The position numbers and the translations under genes were made by a program. A stretch of 41,482 nucleotides of DNA from Bigelowiella natans CCMP2755 (taxonomy: Eukaryota > Protista > Cercozoa), in NCBI GenBank assembly GCA_000320545.1, contig ADNK01003028.1:1-41482 (forward strand). Reading direction: 5' to 3'. Numbering within the stretch: position 1 is the first letter of the stretch; each line of letters opens with the position of its first letter. Positions 781 through 7,526 of this stretch are shown here, piece by piece. The notes beneath the pieces were generated by a model. The model saw only the letters and a list, made by a program, of their open reading frames with translations. It made no database searches and was not told the DNA's origin.

Positions 781-1950
781 GAATCATGCCATTTTGAAAA
801 ACCAGCTAGTTGATTTGCTAGTCACAGTCCTCACTGAAGCCAGTTCGAGGCACTGCATTTCGCACACTGCAAATGTCTTGCAACATTTTGGAAACGTAGT
901 TCGTCATCATTGTTCATTGTTCATTGTCATTGTTCTCATTGTTCTAGAGAAGTCGAGAAAAATGTCATCGTCCTTCCTGCAACTTGTGCTCTTCAAGTCC
1001 TTGCAACGAGTGTTGTTGAGGCTCTGCTGCATGCAAACGCCTGTCTCCCATGTGGTTCTGGCGCATGTAGATTTGATCAACGCTTTGTTCATTGTTCATT
1101 GTTCATTGGAAGTGCAGAACCATCATCAAGTTCATTGTTCATTGTTCATCTCCACACACCAGCGTCACACCGCAACACTTCCTGCGCTCTTTCCTGAGCT
1201 AGACGATGGTTGCGAAACAGCGTGCGCATGCTCGAAGGTCACGTGTTGCGTGTGTGCGAACTGCAAGTTCCTTCTCCGACAAGGCTTGCAAGTTGTCTTT
1301 GCTCCATGTCATTGAAGTGCAATGATCTTTTCGTGATCGGTTTTGTTTGAGGCGCAAGAGCATTCTCACGTTGTGTTTGCGTGCCACTGCTTGTCATTGC
1401 GTGCATTTGAAAGACCCCTAGCTAGCTGCGTGTAGCCCGCAATGGACGATGTGAAAATTGAGTGCACACACTTGGCTAGTTGGTGTCTGTGCTAGCTGTG
1501 CATGACCGCACGTCTCAACTGGCATGCGCGTCCACATGCCAGCATGCTAGCATGTGGATGTGTGAATCGCTAGATCGTGCGTGTGGCAGGTCTCTGCTAG
1601 ATCTAGCAGATGCAAATTGCTGATGCGACAAGCTGGTGGTGAGACATGATGCCTGTGCGCACCACGCAGCACGAATGACATCTGACAGCATGCATGCATG
1701 TGACAGTTTGCTAGTTTGGCACGTTTGCACAAACAGCTCACTAGCTCGATCGTCCTAGCTCATGCCAGAATGTGCACGACGCTACATGCCTAGATGCTCC
1801 ATGATGATTTCCTTCATCTCAGCTGCATTCACTACACAATGAATCGGCGCAATGGAGTGCAACAATCATGATGCATACACAATGCACACTGCATCGTAGC
1901 TTTTTTGGCGATGTCATGTCTCATTGAACAGTCGCAATGTCACATTTTGT
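781..1950. other. Intergenic TpA-depleted, TpG/CpA-rich island (hypermutated DNA, possibly a decayed repeat or gene)
   Basis: Hand count for 781-1860: 21 TA dinucleotides, all in CTAG (16), GTAG (3) or CTAC (2). No TAA, TAT, TTA or ATA. CG is frequent. Contains (TCATTGT)n arrays. Confidence 0.85.
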
Positions 1951-2109
1951 TGGCACTGCTAGATTAGGTATGGAGTTTGTGGTGGCACATACAACGTGGT
2001 TGGACATGCATGACTTTTAGTTGAGGTTTTCATGAATACAAGGATAAAAAGAAGGATTACGGATACGGTGACATTCTTCTATTTTGCAATATCTTAATAC
2101 CTCATCGTA

Positions 2110-3753
2110 TCAGGAGGATTCTGGCAAACGTTGATACACATTAGGGTTAGCTGACGAGCAGCATCCGCCCTCATTCTGAATGGAAAGAACAGACATCATT
2201 ACTACTAATCTTTACTACACAATTGGGTTTAATATTTAATTTCCTTCTCACTTTAATATTTGACGCCATGTTGCTGCCATTTTCATCAAAAATAGCACTT
2301 CCTTCCTTTAACTCAGACCCATAACTAGTAGAAATGGACAGTTTAATTAGGCTGAAATTAATACGACTACAACAATGTAAATTCTGAAAAAGTATTAAAG
2401 CGTTTAGAATTATTCTCGTCATCATCATCAACATTATCATCCTCATCAATCATACTACTTAGCGATTGAGCCGGTGGGAAGGAGACTAATTTTGTTTGTT
2501 TGTGAGTCAGATGCTTGCAAGGAAGTGCCTGAGAAGCAGTTACGTGGATGAGAGATCTATGAGGTGATGGTGAAGAAGAAGAAGAAGATGATGATGATGA
2601 TGATGATGATGTTGACGATGAGGTCTTCACCGCAACAACTAACAACTTAAAGCAGCATCTATCTCAAGTACTACCTTCACAACATGGTGTCGCCCCTTCG
2701 CTTACAGGACTAAATACAACACAACAGCACAATGGACAACAAAGAGAACACACACTCTTACCTACTGCTACTACTGTTTACTATTACTACTATTACACCT
2801 ATGCCTGTTGAACGTCACGTGTTTATTACTGTTACTATTACACCTATGTCTGTTGAAAATCACGTGTCCAATAGCTAGCCCAATCACAACAGAGGCAAAT
2901 AAAGGGGACGAGAATGTCATCGCTACTAGCATCAAGAGATAACCTTTTTAAAAAACATGATAAACAATTGTTGTTAAATGATAATGATGTGAGTTCTTAC
3001 TTCTGAAAGCAAGCAGCAAGCAGCAGCAGCAGCAGCAGCTGCAGCTGCAGCAGCATACACAACACTAACATGGCGGTTTCCACTATTACTCAGAGCACCT
3101 AGGCACGTCTGAATGGCATATGTGATTGCCTCTATAATGCCACCGACTCCTTTGAGCATTCCGTCAAAACATTTCCCCCCTTCATGGTCTTCTTCTCCCG
3201 CTCCTCTTTTTTCGTCGATAATCCTAGCAGCCGATACCTACAAGCACAGACAGACAACACAGTTCCAGACATCAGGGAGGAGGAGGAGGAGGGGGGGGAG
3301 GGGGGGGGGGGGGGGGGTCACGCAACAACCAATGGTCACAAGTAATGGTCATATAACAATAATACTACTAAAGTAATACAACTCAACGACTCTCTCGAGG
3401 GAGGGAGGGACTGCTGCTGCTGTGGAGCAATAAAACGAAAACAAAACTAGCAACAACTACCGCCACCGAAAACAAAGTATTATACACAGTAAATACATTT
3501 TCTCCCAAGGTAGACAACTACAACGATGACTATTGTTGTTACTATTAAAGTAAGGGAAACCGTCGACAAAGCATCTAGCTTCCTACCACCTTTTTTTGCT
3601 GCTGTGTCCTTAGAAATCTCCTTAACGCAATGATAACTTCTAGAAGGACCCCCATTCCAATTACACCAAAGCAAGCCCAGATATACCTTTATTATTATTA
3701 TAGAAACAGCAGTATTAGTAGTATTACTATTGCTATTATTATTACTATTATCC

Positions 3754-3786
<33 letters not shown>

Positions 3787-5482
3787 ATAGAAGGAGACAC
3801 GCTGACAACGACTGAGTGAGAACGACAAAGAGTAGTGGTTGATGATGATCATTCCTATATCTTATTTTTACCTCCTCCTACTACAACTGCTAAAATATTG
3901 ATTGTTGGGATACTGTAGTAGTTGGTAATGTTTGCTTTGTTGATGTTGAGTAGCAGTAGCAGTAGTAGTAGTAGTAGTAGTAGTAGTACTTGGCTTTCGT
4001 ATCCAGCACCCAGTTAGGAAAGAGGAGAATAACACACGCTTGCTTACTACTCGTTGGATTCTGAAACCCTTCCATGAACATTGAAACCGCATTTTCTCGA
4101 TTACAAAATTTGCCATTATCCCCCTGTATAAGAATATTGTTAAATAATAAATGGAACGACCATAAATCTAATCATTGGGTGTGTGGTATTAATGCTATAA
4201 TAATTTTATCATTATTTTGAATGGCTGGTTGCTGTTGGTGTTGGTTTTGTTATATCGTAGAAGAAGGAGGTTATTATTGGGATGAGGAGGGTGCTTTTAG
4301 TAGTAGTAGTAGTAGTAGCAGTAGTTGTTGTTGTAGTAGTAGCGGTACTTTCTTTGTTTTCCCTCTCCTACTATGAATCCTACCGTTCCTCCCGCCGTCG
4401 CATTGTTGGCCAGGCATTTCGGCAGACACCTAGCAAACAAACATCATGTGTACTGTGAAGATTCTCTTCAAAAACAAACTGCTGCTGCAAGTAGTGAGAT
4501 ATGTTATTTGTCGGTGATCATTATGAAATTATATTGCAATTTCTTAATTTATTCTTGCTAGTTAGTCAACTTATCGATAAAAATGTTGAACACTGCTGTA
4601 ATTATCAAATAATGATTTATTAGGGACATTCATCCATCGTCTTCATCATGATAGGCGTTAGATATCGATGATTCATAATATTCATTTTTATATTTTTTAC
4701 TACTTATATGTTTATAAGTTTATGACGACCCCATTTTCCCTGGATCACACGGTTCTCCCGTACTAGTTGATAGGCACTCCTTCTGATATAATAGAGTTTT
4801 AACTCAGCAGCCATAATGTCGATGTTGTTGAATTTTGAAAATTGTTGAATTATCGCTTTTAGCCGTCGTGGTCGTATTTGTTTTTATCTTGTCTTGATGA
4901 TTTTCTTGATCATCTTCTTCTTACATGCTGCGACGCAGAACATTGAGGATCATCAGCTGCCCAACATTTCATCCAGCAATGAAACTCACCAGCAGCGCAT
5001 CCTACCTCTATATGTTTAATATATATTAAGAGAAGAATTAGAGAGGGAGGATAAATAACAGATATTATTCAATTACTATGAGCAACGACCTTCCTTGTGG
5101 ATGGTGTAACGGCTGCTGCTGCTGCTGCTGCTTCTGGTTCCGTTTTCCCTTGATGCTGCTACTGCCACTCTTGTTTGTTCGTCATCATCCTGATACACCC
5201 TTGCACATCCTAACGCCGAAAGAGAGGAGGAGGGGGGGGAGGAGGAAGAAGAAGGAGAAGAAGACTCGAGGGACGGAATAATGAATAACGGAGAAGAAGA
5301 AGAAGAAGAAGAAGAAGAAGAAGAAGAAGAAGAGGGGAAAGAGGAGACAGTAGGAGAAAATGTTAGCAGCCCTATTCACCACACCTATCAAGCCAATGCC
5401 ATCAGTATCAATTAAATCACTAACTTTCCATACATATCACGATTACTACTTACTATTACTACTTACTATTACTACTTACTAT

Positions 5483-5520
<38 letters not shown>

Positions 5521-6048
5521 TAAACAGCAGCTAGTACCTGAAGCATCAATTGCATTGATCGGTACGCTTGAAAAGTAACCCCTGCTTCAGTGCTGTACGC
5601 ATCTGGAGGTGGTAGAAACATCCTTCCATACCATAGCCTTGTAGCTCCACTAGGGACCCGTACGGCATGTGGAACAGAGCTTCGAATGGTAGTATCATCA
5701 TCATGATCATCACGATGATGATGATGATGATCACGAGAGGACTCTTCTAACTTGACCCACCTCGCCATCCCTGCTCCCATCATGAAGACTAAACAATGCG
5801 GGGAAGGAAATAGTGCCTCCACTTTGCTTGTATTTCTTAGTTCTATGAAGAAGCCTGGAGAGGCATCGAAGATCTTGTCATCGTGGGGTTTTTCCCTCCG
5901 AGGGGTGAAAGACGAAGACGAAGAAGAAGAAGAAGAAGTAGTAGCGAGAAGTGCGGGGGAGATAGCAATAAAGAGGCCATCATCAGTGTGGAAGTCTATT
6001 GAATGATCATTAGCTGTGCTGCTCCTTATTTCCTGAATTGTACCGTGG

Positions 6049-6079
<31 letters not shown>

Positions 6080-7123
6080 CAAATTAGAAAGTTCAACATG
6101 TGTGTCGTCGATCGATATCACGTTTTTTCACGAGATTTCTCGAAGAAGTAGTCTATGTCGACCAATCTAATACTACCTGAGCACGTTCAGCTACTGATGG
6201 GGCCTTATATGTGTGGAAATGGTCAAGTTGCTGTGCATGTTCCAAAGCATGACCCAGATCTCCATAGAAAGAATTATTATCCCCAGGTCTGATGAATGTT
6301 ATAGTCACCACATATTGAATTATTATCTCAGGTCTGATGAATGTTATAGTAGTCACCACATATTTTGAGAATGATCACACACCAACTACCCTCTTTCAAT
6401 TTGCAATCCATTGAAAGCCGTATCCAAGCTTTTGATGAAGTCCTTGCTTACCTTGTAAGGATTTGTGAGAGGGGGGGCGGGGGGGTGGGGCACGCACATA
6501 TAAGTTGATATGATAAAATGATGCTCGCCAATACTTTTTTCTTTAGCATACCTCTGTGGTCAGCTTCCTTAATCTCGAGGATATAGCTGCAAATCGAGAG
6601 CACTTAGACTGTATCTGGTGCTCGAAAGGCATGGAAACTCCGGATCCTGCATGAAGCAGCATTGTTTCAAAATCAATAGCAACAGCATTGTACCAAAGTT
6701 ATCGATTGCCTTAATCTACTATGAATAATACAAACATCTCTACTCCCCACTTGTTTCAGATGCAAGTGTAAGCCGCAGTGTCCCATCCTGAAGTGCTTCC
6801 CTCGCAAATAATTGGGAATGCTCAAGTGCACAATTTTCTAGAGATTCCATTGCACCAATGTGGAGCTCCTTCATCATTGGAATATCTGTTATAGCAACGA
6901 TTCCATGTTCTCTGAGAGTCTCTGAGAAGGATGTTGATACGATTCCTTGCCTCCCCCATCCATTTCGTCTACTTCCTTCCTTCAGAAAGGAGTATGGAAC
7001 TGAAGGAACGTGGAATGGAGGATAGAAAGAATCGTCCACATGATAAGGGCTACCCCAATCGATGGAGTTTGCAGCTATCACGGTACACCATGAATGTACG
7101 AGTAGCAGAAGTAGGTATTTCAT
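2110..7123 (-). CDS. Signal peptide + 2OG-Fe(II) dioxygenase-like domain + Cys-rich linker + Ctr (SLC31) copper transporter fusion, about 17 exons
   Basis: ATG 7123 (MKYLLLLLVHSWCTVIAA). Exon 6032-5538 has IDF-HTD-DGLFIAISP, VP-H-AV and T-R-LWYGRMFLPP. Cys-rich exons at about 5005-4384 (GCAAGEFHCWMKC, ECLSTSTGEPC, CLPKC). Exon 4123-3990 MFMEGF...CVILLFPNWVLDT. Exon 3686-3590 YIWACFGVIGMGVLLEVIIALRR (TM1). Exon 2943-2844 GYLL-MLVAM-TFSSPLFASVVI-GLAIG, an exact Ctr MxxxM-x12-GxxxG motif. Tail has PCC and GCC; TGA at 2112-2110. The 5538>5264 junction needs a GAG acceptor and is the least certain. Confidence 0.78.
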
Positions 7124-7526
7124 AATCCTTTAATCTACTGCTGCCTGCCCCTATCTCTGCCTCGCTTAATTGTGCCCTACTTCTACTACAACTACTAGCA
7201 CTGCAGCTAGACTGGTTTATGGTTGGCCGGTCTCGTCTGCCTTCTTTCTGATGAATTAATTATTGGCTAATAAATAATGATAAATAAATAATATAATAAC
7301 AGGGATTTTACCATGTCGTAGGTAATAATTACATTGGATTAATAATGATGAATGGATGGTTTAATCGACTTCCTTTCTGTCTGCCTTCCTTTCTGTCTTT
7401 CTTTCTTTCTTAGTTTATTAGATCTTGTTAGATCTAGATCTAGATCTAGTTCACTTCCCGACTTTTCTTCTTTGACTTCCAAGAAGAATAAAAAGCCCCC
7501 CACCTCTACCTTCCTCTCCTCTAACC
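7124..7526. promoter_or_regulatory. About 400-bp divergent (bidirectional) promoter region with (TAGATC)3 at 7429-7449
   Basis: Lies between head-to-head ATGs at 7123 (-) and 7527 (+). AT-rich core at about 7255-7350. Confidence 0.55.

What the first reader, a model, noticed from the sequence alone, without database searches (positions are those of the whole stretch)
2110..7123. Ctr copper transporter carrying an extracytoplasmic 2OG-Fe(II) dioxygenase-like domain
Seen: one spliceable frame joins a signal peptide, a domain with HxD...H and a downstream Arg (HTD at about 5982-5990, PHAV, TRLWYGR), a His/Asp tract (HHHHHRDDHDDD), a Cys-rich module and a complete Ctr domain (MxM before TM1, MLVAM-x12-GLAIG, two CC motifs in the tail). 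Known: Ctr/SLC31 proteins are small trimeric Cu(I) importers with short Met/His-rich ectodomains; IPNS-like 2OG oxygenases are normally soluble, with an RxS motif (RxW here). Inference: an enzymatic or metal-binding ectodomain over the pore could release, reduce or capture ligand-bound copper, or couple Fe status to Cu uptake. I recall similar predicted architectures in other protists but cannot verify this and know of no functional characterisation.
Basis: partly seen in the sequence, partly recalled or inferred. Interest (0 to 1): 0.8.

Follow-up and report, generated by a model that had tools for sequence, protein, structure and literature searches.

The report
Copper channel fused to oxygenase-like ectodomain
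This is one real 17-exon gene of the alga Bigelowiella natans that joins a secreted, oxygenase-shaped metal-binding domain to a standard Ctr copper-uptake channel; the design is shared by many marine protists, and what the extra domain does is still untested.

Summary
The window is Bigelowiella natans. A public transcript contig (L013, 2492 nt) equals 17 minus-strand exons of the window with zero mismatches. All 16 introns are GT-AG.

The 735-aa product (P0162) has five parts:
- a signal peptide;
- an N-domain (aa 19-380);
- a module with 10 Cys, 8 of them conserved family-wide (aa 397-505);
- a complete Ctr domain (Pfam 75 bits, MxM, MxxxM-x12-GxxxG);
- a tail with two CC motifs.

The fusion is old and widespread. 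About 36 of the 150 best 50%-identity cluster representatives carry Ctr, two of them with a C-terminal HMA domain. About 55 carry a DOMON (cytochrome-like) domain instead. The two types separate on a single branch.

JGI's catalogue model (452 aa) is truncated and misses the Ctr part. Strenkert et al. mention an "unannotated N-terminal domain" on protist CTRs that is probably this one; its oxygenase fold appears to be undescribed. The function (copper capture, reduction or ligand release) is inferred, not shown.

The parts
1923..7247 (-). Transcribed region of the gene (longest transcript contigs)
   Evidence: L012 aligns from 7247 to 1923; L013 from 7229 to 1932; L014 from 7240 to 1956.
2110..7123 (-). 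CDS of the 735-aa protein (P0162), 17 exons. Exons: 7229-6751, 6646-6552, 6451-6390, 6288-6177, 6032-5538, 5264-5090, 5007-4925, 4782-4730, 4429-4384, 4123-3990, 3686-3590, 3237-3099, 2943-2844, 2709-2675, 2528-2459, 2324-2252, 2175-1932.
   Evidence: Exon-by-exon comparison with cDNA L013 gives 0 mismatches, and all 16 introns are GT..AG.
7070..7123 (-). Signal peptide (aa 1-18)
   Evidence: N-terminal hydrophobic peak. In full-length relatives the N-domain starts 20-50 residues in.
5538..7069 (-). Extracytoplasmic IPNS-like 2OG-oxygenase-fold domain (aa 19-379, exons 1-5)
5982..5990 (-). H229-T-D231, proximal metal ligands (HxD)
   Evidence: Aligned to the H-x-D of 9hdl. H and D are each 76 of 76 in relatives.
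5667..5669 (-). H336, distal metal ligand
   Evidence: Aligned to the 'VPH' His of 9hdl; 76 of 76.
5619..5639 (-). R346-L-W348-Y-G350-R-M352 strand (RxW in place of RxS)
   Evidence: R346, W348, G350 and M352 are each 76 of 76.
5694..5729 (-). His/Asp low-complexity tract (aa 316-327) in the loop before H336
   Evidence: Lineage-specific insertion: 0-2 of 75 relatives are occupied there. Low pLDDT. Strain polymorphism.
4103..5213 (-). Cys-rich module (aa 397-505; exons 6-10, including the CWxxC motif)
   Evidence: Eight Cys (399, 441, 448, 452, 460, 468, 488, 505) are conserved in both the Ctr-type and DOMON-type relatives. The module is present in 153 of 178 retrieved proteins.
2844..4123 (-). 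Ctr copper-transporter domain (aa ~506-653; exons 10-13)
   Evidence: Pfam PF04145: 75.1 bits, E 1.1e-20, profile positions 12-151 of 151. Exon pieces also hit.
4073..4081 (-). M513-F-M515, the Met motif ahead of TM1
   Evidence: M513 and M515 are 16 of 16 in Ctr-type relatives and absent from the DOMON type.
3617..3685 (-). TM1 (aa 544-566)
   Evidence: Hydropathy peak; Pfam Ctr hit on this exon alone.
2867..2932 (-). MxxxM-x12-GxxxG signature spanning TM2 and TM3 (aa 626-647)
   Evidence: Read directly in P0162. The signature is as defined in PMC9502191.
2110..2709 (-). Cytosolic tail (aa 655-735; exons 14-17) with CC motifs at 2684-2679 and 2163-2158
   Evidence: P0162 sequence. 'GATPCCEG(T)SL' is shared with P0002 and P0003.

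Best explanation
SHOWN: this is one gene of Bigelowiella natans. Its fully spliced mRNA encodes a 735-aa membrane protein with five parts: a signal peptide; an extracytoplasmic domain with the fold of IPNS-like 2OG/Fe(II) oxygenases, an intact His-Asp-His metal triad and the strand-VIII Arg; a conserved Cys-rich module; a canonical three-helix Ctr Cu(I) channel; and a cytosolic tail with CC motifs.

INFERRED: the protein is a copper importer whose ectodomain is a built-in copper-acquisition device. I favour metal-centred chemistry. In this model the triad, exposed to oxic seawater, binds Cu(II) taken from organic complexes. A one-electron reduction follows, possibly helped by a carboxylate or ascorbate-type ligand held by R346 and Y204. 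The reduction lowers the metal's affinity for the N/O ligands. Cu(I) then passes through soft ligands (invariant M352, the CWxxC of the Cys-rich module, M513/M515) into the trimeric pore and on to the CC motifs of the tail. Sister proteins that carry a cytochrome-like DOMON domain instead of Ctr would be the soluble or anchored version of the same surface chemistry.
For: Gene structure: cDNA L013 equals 17 window exons with 0 mismatches and 16 GT-AG introns. Independent contigs L014 and L012 and MMETSP ORFs P0162 and P0168 agree.

Ctr: PF04145 at 75 bits, the MxM motif and MxxxM-x12-GxxxG.

Fold.

Active-site conservation: H229, D231, H336, R346, W348, G350 and M352 are 76 of 76; H200, H202 and Y204 are at least 68 of 76.

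Extracytoplasmic placement: signal peptide, 8 conserved Cys in the linker module, Ctr N-out topology (established knowledge), and cytosolic HMA domains on the C-termini of relatives P0080 and P0117.

Link to copper and to electron transfer: the same ectodomain is fused either to Ctr (about 36 of 150) or to a DOMON-fold domain (about 55 of 150). The DOMON domain has an invariant Met and a near-invariant His spaced as the heme ligands of CDH cytochromes are (inference). The two partners separate on a single branch of the ectodomain tree (SH-aLRT 99).

Literature: protist CTRs carry an unannotated N-terminal domain whose stand-alone Chlamydomonas homologue is a target of the copper regulator CRR1 (10.1101/2023.10.19.563170).
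Against: No expression, localisation, metal-binding or transport data exist for this protein. Retention of the Arg and of Y204 is what a true 2OG or ascorbate-dependent oxygenase would show, so classical oxygenase chemistry on an organic substrate is not excluded. I had no model coordinates, so I could not check that H200, H202, W348 and M352 line one pocket. Identity with the Cre05.g236039/Albugo domain rests on matching descriptions, not on a sequence comparison. Heme binding by the DOMON partner is inferred from two conserved residues. The Ctr could sit in an internal membrane, with the ectodomain in a lumen.
Confidence: 0.55

Rival explanations
1. The ectodomain is a true Fe(II)-dependent oxygenase that uses 2OG or, like ACC oxidase, ascorbate. 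It oxidises an organic substrate at the cell surface or in the secretory lumen. The substrate could be a copper-chelating ligand that is destroyed next to the pore, or something unrelated to copper such as a wall or glycoprotein component.
Against: Fe(II) and 2OG are scarce outside the cell in oxic seawater. The Ser of RxS is replaced by an invariant Trp (76 of 76), and extra invariant His and Met residues appear on the neighbouring strands. The only recurrent fusion partners are a copper channel (with or without HMA) and an electron-transfer-type DOMON domain. These fit metal or redox handling better than hydroxylation of an organic substrate.
Confidence: 0.25
2. The ectodomain is not catalytic and does not pass metal on. 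It acts as a sensor or gate that couples Fe, O2 or metabolite status to Cu uptake, or as a structural cap or oligomerisation scaffold over the pore.
For: Ligand-binding pseudo-enzymes built on enzyme folds are common. The ectodomain is far larger (about 490 aa) than any known Ctr ectodomain.
Against: All catalytic-type residues are strictly invariant across branch lengths of about 0.5-1 substitution per site. The same ectodomain also occurs without any channel, as the DOMON-type secreted or anchored proteins, so it has a function independent of gating a pore.
Confidence: 0.12
3. These are two neighbouring genes (a secreted oxygenase-like protein and a small Ctr that starts at ATG 4081), joined only by read-through or chimeric assembly.
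For: ATG 4081 sits exactly at the MxM motif. JGI's catalogue model (P0001) stops before the Ctr part. Some assembled isoforms retain intron 7 and split into two ORFs (P0167 plus P0164).
Against: Fully spliced, single-ORF transcripts occur in at least two JGI samples and two MMETSP assemblies. Exons 8 and 9, which lie inside the supposed spacer, are coding and conserved, with counterparts in P0002, P0003 and P0006. The fused ORF also occurs in Norrisiella and in more than 30 other clusters. All of these keep the frame through 16 canonical introns.
Confidence: 0.02

Closest known systems
Canonical Ctr/COPT/SLC31 Cu(I) importers (yeast Ctr1, human CTR1, plant COPT, diatom ToCTR)
   Same: Pfam Ctr domain, Met motif before TM1, MxxxM-x12-GxxxG, and a Cys-containing cytosolic tail. 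N-out/C-in topology and trimeric pore are expected.
   Different: Known ectodomains are short, unstructured Met/His-rich tails. Here about 490 residues of folded protein (an oxygenase-fold domain plus a Cys-rich module) precede the Met motif.
CTRA-CTR transporters (Chlamydomonas CTR1/CTR2, Dictyostelium P80) and soluble CTR3 (Strenkert et al., 10.1101/2023.10.19.563170)
   Same: The logic matches: a Ctr channel with a folded, Cys-rich extracytoplasmic Cu-acquisition domain, with soluble stand-alone versions of that domain also existing.
   Different: CTRA is a small Cys-rich domain. The authors state that the N-terminal domain of the 'protist cluster' is unrelated to CTRA. The present ectodomain has an enzyme fold with a His-Asp-His triad.
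'Unannotated N-terminal domain' of protist-cluster CTRs (Albugo candida CTR) and stand-alone Cre05.g236039, a CRR1 target (same paper)
   Same: It sits N-terminal to Ctr in protists and algae, occurs stand-alone and secreted elsewhere, is rich in Cys, Met and His, and C-terminal HMA domains occur in the same cluster (seen here on P0080 and P0117).
   Different: Identity was not shown by sequence here. The paper gives the domain no fold or family assignment and does not mention a 2OG-oxygenase fold or a DOMON partner.
IPNS-like 2OG/Fe(II) oxygenases (N. crassa PDN2'H 9hdl, rice GA2ox3 6ku3, DAOCS, ANS, ACC oxidase, IPNS)
   Different: The known enzymes are soluble and cytosolic, whereas this domain is secreted and membrane-tethered. 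It has RxW in place of RxS, an extra invariant His-x-His and an invariant Met, falls below Pfam thresholds, and is always followed by a Cys-rich module.
Extracellular redox partners of copper centres: CDH cytochrome (DOMON) with LPMO, dopamine beta-hydroxylase (DOMON plus Cu domain), fungal Bim1 with Ctr1
   Different: No LPMO or Cu-monooxygenase fold is present. The metal domain is a DSBH oxygenase fold. Heme binding by this DOMON domain is untested.

Membership tests
Ctr copper transporter family (PF04145 / SLC31) | Match to the family HMM above the curated cut-off | tested here: met
   P0162 scores 75.1 bits against a cut-off of 25.3, E 1.1e-20, profile positions 12-151 of 151. The exon piece 2774-2947 alone scores 35.3 bits.
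Ctr copper transporter family (PF04145 / SLC31) | MxxxM-x12-GxxxG signature in TM2/TM3 | tested here: met
   MLVAM, then 12 residues, then GLAIG at aa 626-647. The signature is as stated in PMC9502191.
Ctr copper transporter family (PF04145 / SLC31) | Three transmembrane helices, with a Met motif on the extracytoplasmic side before TM1 | tested here: met
   Hydropathy peaks lie at 544-566 and 606-650. M513-x-M515 is 16 of 16 in Ctr-type relatives.
Ctr copper transporter family (PF04145 / SLC31) | Trimeric Cu(I)-selective transport | not tested
   Needs yeast ctr1/ctr3 complementation or a structure. No complex prediction was run because the full-length trimer exceeds the size limit.
2OG/Fe(II) oxygenase superfamily, IPNS-like class (PF14226 DIOX_N + PF03171 2OG-FeII_Oxy) | Double-stranded beta-helix core with an N-terminal alpha/beta extension | tested here: met
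2OG/Fe(II) oxygenase superfamily, IPNS-like class (PF14226 DIOX_N + PF03171 2OG-FeII_Oxy) | HxD/E...H facial triad | tested here: met
   H229, D231 and H336 align to the H-x-D and the 'VPH' His of 9hdl. Each is 76 of 76 in relatives.
2OG/Fe(II) oxygenase superfamily, IPNS-like class (PF14226 DIOX_N + PF03171 2OG-FeII_Oxy) | RxS motif on strand VIII that binds the 2OG C5 carboxylate | tested here: not met
   The Arg is present and invariant (R346), but the Ser is replaced by an invariant Trp (W348, 76 of 76). A carboxylate-binding Arg/Tyr pair may persist; whether 2OG binds is open.
2OG/Fe(II) oxygenase superfamily, IPNS-like class (PF14226 DIOX_N + PF03171 2OG-FeII_Oxy) | Match to the Pfam HMMs above the cut-off | tested here: not met
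   P0162 and the exon pieces give no hit. Only 1 of 151 relatives reaches PF03171, at E 0.0088. Membership holds at the superfamily or fold level only.
2OG/Fe(II) oxygenase superfamily, IPNS-like class (PF14226 DIOX_N + PF03171 2OG-FeII_Oxy) | Fe(II)- and 2OG-dependent turnover | not testable with these tools
   Needs a biochemical assay.
Cre05.g236039-like N-terminal domain of 'protist cluster' CTRs (Strenkert et al.) | N-terminal to Ctr in protists and algae; stand-alone secreted forms; C-terminal HMA in the same cluster | tested here: met
   Ctr fusions, non-Ctr forms and HMA on P0080 (E 3.6e-8) and P0117 were all found.
Cre05.g236039-like N-terminal domain of 'protist cluster' CTRs (Strenkert et al.) | Sequence similarity to Cre05.g236039 or the Albugo candida CTR | not testable with these tools
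   Neither sequence could be fetched, and the paper and its supplement hold no sequences or accessions.
CTRA-CTR subfamily | Presence of a CTRA Cys-rich domain | not tested
   No CTRA sequence was available. The authors state that the protist-cluster domain is unrelated to CTRA.

The most novel reading that the evidence does not exclude
The ectodomain is a new kind of extracellular copper-mobilising enzyme built on a 2OG-oxygenase scaffold: a cupric reductase or a Cu-ligand-destroying oxygenase. It would let Ctr take up organically bound Cu(II) without a separate NOX-type FRE reductase. The DOMON-fused sister proteins would be its free-standing, heme-fed form. Together they would form a widespread, unrecognised copper (or metal) acquisition system of marine protists.
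Probability: 0.25. Interest if true: 0.85.

Novelty: new variant of a known kind. Interest (0 to 1): 0.62.

Why it matters
In the ocean almost all copper is Cu(II) held by strong organic ligands, while Ctr channels accept only Cu(I). How phytoplankton bridge that gap is an open question, currently answered with separate FRE reductases (PMC9502191). A channel with a conserved, metal-binding, enzyme-fold domain mounted on it, found in dozens of protist lineages, is a concrete and testable candidate for that missing step. Its sister form attached to a cytochrome-like DOMON domain adds to the case. The finding also corrects the public B. natans gene model, which hides the fusion. It gives a fold and candidate catalytic residues to a domain that the literature calls 'unannotated'.

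Tried and rejected
- Pfam on N-domain exon pieces found nothing.
- The single-sequence PDB search with the 195-aa exon gave only His-tag artefacts.
- The word search with the 195-aa exon was blank, because real relatives are longer than its length window.
- The word search with profile A2 returned only 9 proteins, because low-complexity words swamped the candidate list.
- The structural 'atlas' library was not available.
- Attempts to name the organisms of other fusion-bearing contigs failed: the look-ups gave only metagenome or metatranscriptome records without names. Named carriers are therefore only B. natans and Norrisiella sphaerica.
- A family profile against PDB found no sequence-level match for the DOMON-like region. 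A fold search was needed for that.
- The earlier-findings search by words was blank.
- My first hand-built splice model was partly wrong. I had a GTAATA donor near 5485 for intron 5, and I read a CC-rich ORF at 2777-2710 as part of the C-tail; that stretch is intron 13. Transcript evidence replaced the model.
- The two-gene hypothesis, my prior at about 55%, was rejected.
All full-length work used the public transcript contig L013 and the database protein P0162 by reference, and window exons were compared one by one.
- No complex prediction was sent, because the full-length trimer is too large and Ctr trimerisation is not in doubt.
Full report
**What is there.** The region lies in an intron-rich eukaryotic genome with many low-complexity tracts. 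The closest database protein, P0001, is JGI model Bigna1|82330 of Bigelowiella natans, so the window (G000:C709) is from this chlorarachniophyte alga. Pfam recognised the Ctr copper-transporter family on two isolated exon pieces (2774-2947 at 35 bits; 3578-3688 at 17 bits). It recognised nothing on the upstream open frames. At that point two neighbouring genes seemed slightly more likely to me than one fused gene.

**Gene structure.** An exhaustive HMMER search with the 195-aa exon (5475-6059) gave 214 relatives. Most are 550-750 aa long, with the match at about residues 200-350, so they carry a large C-terminal extension.
- The 90% cluster around P0158 holds transcript-derived ORFs of B. natans, including two complete 735-aa ORFs, P0162 and P0168.
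- Transcript contig L013 (JGI Ga0186172_101133, 2492 nt), which encodes P0162, is an exact concatenation of 17 minus-strand stretches of the window, with 0 mismatches.
- All 16 introns are GT..AG and 76-352 nt long.
- L014, from a second sample, has the same structure.
Full-length work used L013 and P0162 by reference.

**Isoforms and the catalogue model.** L012, from a third sample, is spliced in the same way through exon 11 but retains three introns in the Ctr part. Other assembled isoforms retain intron 7, which ends the frame at '...SASQHVRRR*'. This splits the message into an ectodomain ORF (P0167) and a Ctr ORF that starts at M482 (P0164). Heavy intron retention is a known trait of B. 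natans (my own knowledge, Curtis et al. 2012). The JGI catalogue model P0001 (452 aa) has three faults: a wrong 5' end, a spurious intron that removes 27 codons, and a stop inside retained intron 8. It therefore hides the fusion.

**Domain map of P0162.**
- Signal peptide, aa 1-18.
- N-domain, aa 19-380, with H229-x-D231, H336 and R346-x-W348.
- A Ser/Pro linker.
- Cys-rich module, aa 397-505. It holds ten Cys, eight of them conserved family-wide.
- Ctr domain, aa 506-653. Pfam gives 75.1 bits and E 1.1e-20. It has M513-x-M515, TM1 at 544-566, and MLVAM-x12-GLAIG at 626-647.
- Tail, aa 654-735, with CC at 664/665 and 719/720.
- The His/Asp tract (aa 316-327) is a B. natans-specific insertion in the loop before H336. 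Between 0 and 2 of 75 relatives have residues there, and it differs between strains.

**The N-domain is an IPNS-like 2OG-oxygenase fold.**
- With a 150-sequence alignment, AlphaFold2 gave mean pLDDT 86.7 and pTM 0.87.
- Foldseek found 276 PDB matches at E<=1e-3. Every listed match is a 2OG oxygenase or close kin. The list is led by N. crassa pyrimidine nucleoside 2'-hydroxylase (9hdl, E 1e-14), followed by GA2ox3, DAOCS, ANS, ACC oxidase and IPNS.
- Independently, the family profile hits 9hdl_A by sequence (E 8.4e-8), aligning H-x-D and the distal His.
- Pfam's own HMMs are not reached. Membership therefore holds at the superfamily level.
- Across 76 relatives, H229, D231, G233, G300, H336, R346, W348, G350 and M352 are invariant. 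H200, H202 and Y204 are nearly so.
- The metal site and a carboxylate-binding Arg/Tyr pair are thus kept. The Ser of RxS is always Trp, and extra His and Met residues appear on the adjoining strands.
- I had no access to model coordinates, so any shared pocket for these residues is inference.

**Distribution and partners.**
- Pfam finds Ctr in 34 of 151 relatives and HMA in 2. P0080 has the order N-domain, Cys-rich module, Ctr, HMA.
- My own HMMs classify the 150 representatives as about 36 of the Ctr type and about 55 with a different C-terminal domain. The rest are shorter or are fragments.
- It carries an invariant Met and a near-invariant His about 104 residues apart. This spacing resembles the Met/His heme ligation of CDH cytochromes (inference).
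- I built a tree from the ectodomain columns only: 79 rows, IQ-TREE quick search, LG+G4. B. natans duplicates, fragments and rows without a C-terminal domain were left out.
- On that tree the Ctr-type and DOMON-type proteins separate on one branch (SH-aLRT 99, one change). The partner was therefore exchanged once, long ago.
- Named carriers of the Ctr fusion are B. natans and Norrisiella sphaerica (MMETSP0113). The others come from unnamed meta-omic contigs.
- B. natans has no second copy of the ectodomain, but it has further Ctr-like loci without it.

**Literature.** Strenkert et al. (bioRxiv 10.1101/2023.10.19.563170; cited as Metallomics 16:mfae013) describe a 'protist cluster' of CTRs.
- These CTRs have C-terminal HMA domains and an 'unannotated N-terminal domain', with Albugo candida as the example.
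- The domain also exists as a secreted stand-alone protein, Cre05.g236039, a target of the copper regulator CRR1 in Chlamydomonas.
- The authors suggest a role in Cu acquisition.
- The descriptors match what I see, so this is probably the same domain (my estimate is about 75%). I could not fetch those sequences to test it.
- I found no paper that assigns the domain to the 2OG-oxygenase fold or notes the DOMON sister architecture.

**How it most likely works.**
- Shown: a secreted-side, metal-binding, enzyme-fold domain and a Cys-rich module are covalently mounted on a canonical Cu(I) channel.
- Inferred: the ectodomain is a copper-acquisition device. In oxic seawater Fe(II) and 2OG are scarce, and a His-Asp-His site would prefer Cu(II) under the Irving-Williams order (established chemistry).
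- The only recurrent partners are a Cu channel, with or without a Cu-chaperone-like HMA domain, and an electron-transfer-type DOMON domain.
- I therefore favour capture of Cu(II) at the triad, followed by one-electron reduction, followed by hand-off of Cu(I) through M352, the CWxxC motif and M513/M515 into the pore (0.55).
- A classical Fe/2OG or ascorbate-dependent oxygenase that acts on a Cu ligand or another substrate is the main rival (0.25).
- A sensor or structural role (0.12) and an assembly artefact (0.02) follow.

**Verdict.** The function is open. This is a new variant of a known kind (Ctr). It was probably already glimpsed in the literature as an unannotated domain, and it now has a fold, candidate active-site residues, a corrected gene model and a sister architecture.

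Noticed in passing
window 7259-4728 (-): The public JGI gene model Bigna1|82330 (P0001, 452 aa) is mis-modelled. It has an upstream start that skips the signal peptide, a spurious intron removing 27 codons (RWVK...TTIR, including the His/Asp tract), a different intron-5 acceptor, and a stop inside retained intron 8. The Ctr half is therefore missing from the catalogue protein.
   Followed up: yes
window 4924-4783 (intron 7), 3589-3238 (intron 11), 2843-2710 (intron 13): Assembled transcripts include intron-retention isoforms. Retaining intron 7 gives a 469-aa secreted ectodomain ORF (P0167) plus a separate Ctr ORF from M482 (P0164). Retaining intron 11 truncates the protein after TM1 (P0158). 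Retaining intron 13 replaces the tail (P0172). It is unknown whether a soluble ectodomain is really made.
   Followed up: partly
window 2843-2710 (-): Intron 13 holds a second copy of the end of exon 13 with its donor ('...ttcaacag[a/g]cataggtgtaatagta', near 2846 and 2805). It also holds an open, CC-rich frame that looks coding but is spliced out.
   Followed up: partly
window 6380-6290 (-): Intron 3 ends in a tandem duplication of about 45 nt, and each copy carries a 'cattcatcag' acceptor. Only the second copy is used in the transcripts.
   Followed up: no
G000:C2862:241667-241978 (L007); G000:C1078:52611-52715 (L008): There are further Ctr-like loci in the same genome (25.9 and 23.1 bits to PF04145). 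The oxygenase-like ectodomain has no second copy in the genome, so these loci lack it.
   Followed up: partly
P0005, P0008, P0154 and about 55 cluster representatives (not in the window): A sister family has the order: the same oxygenase-fold domain, the Cys-rich module, then a DOMON-fold domain with an invariant Met and a near-invariant His. Some members end in a GPI-signal-like hydrophobic tail (P0008) and others in a basic tail (P0005). This appears to be an undescribed family of secreted proteins.
   Followed up: partly
window 781-1950: The stretch that another note (s1-744416) flags for TpA depletion begins right at the 3' end of this gene's transcripts (1923-1932). It is therefore the downstream intergenic or neighbouring region, not part of this gene.
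   Followed up: no
window 2000-7300, introns: Most introns of this gene are filled with trinucleotide repeats (GTA/TAC, AGC, CTT and poly-C/T tracts). These produce long, misleading poly-Y, poly-S, poly-L or poly-T open frames on both strands.
   Followed up: no
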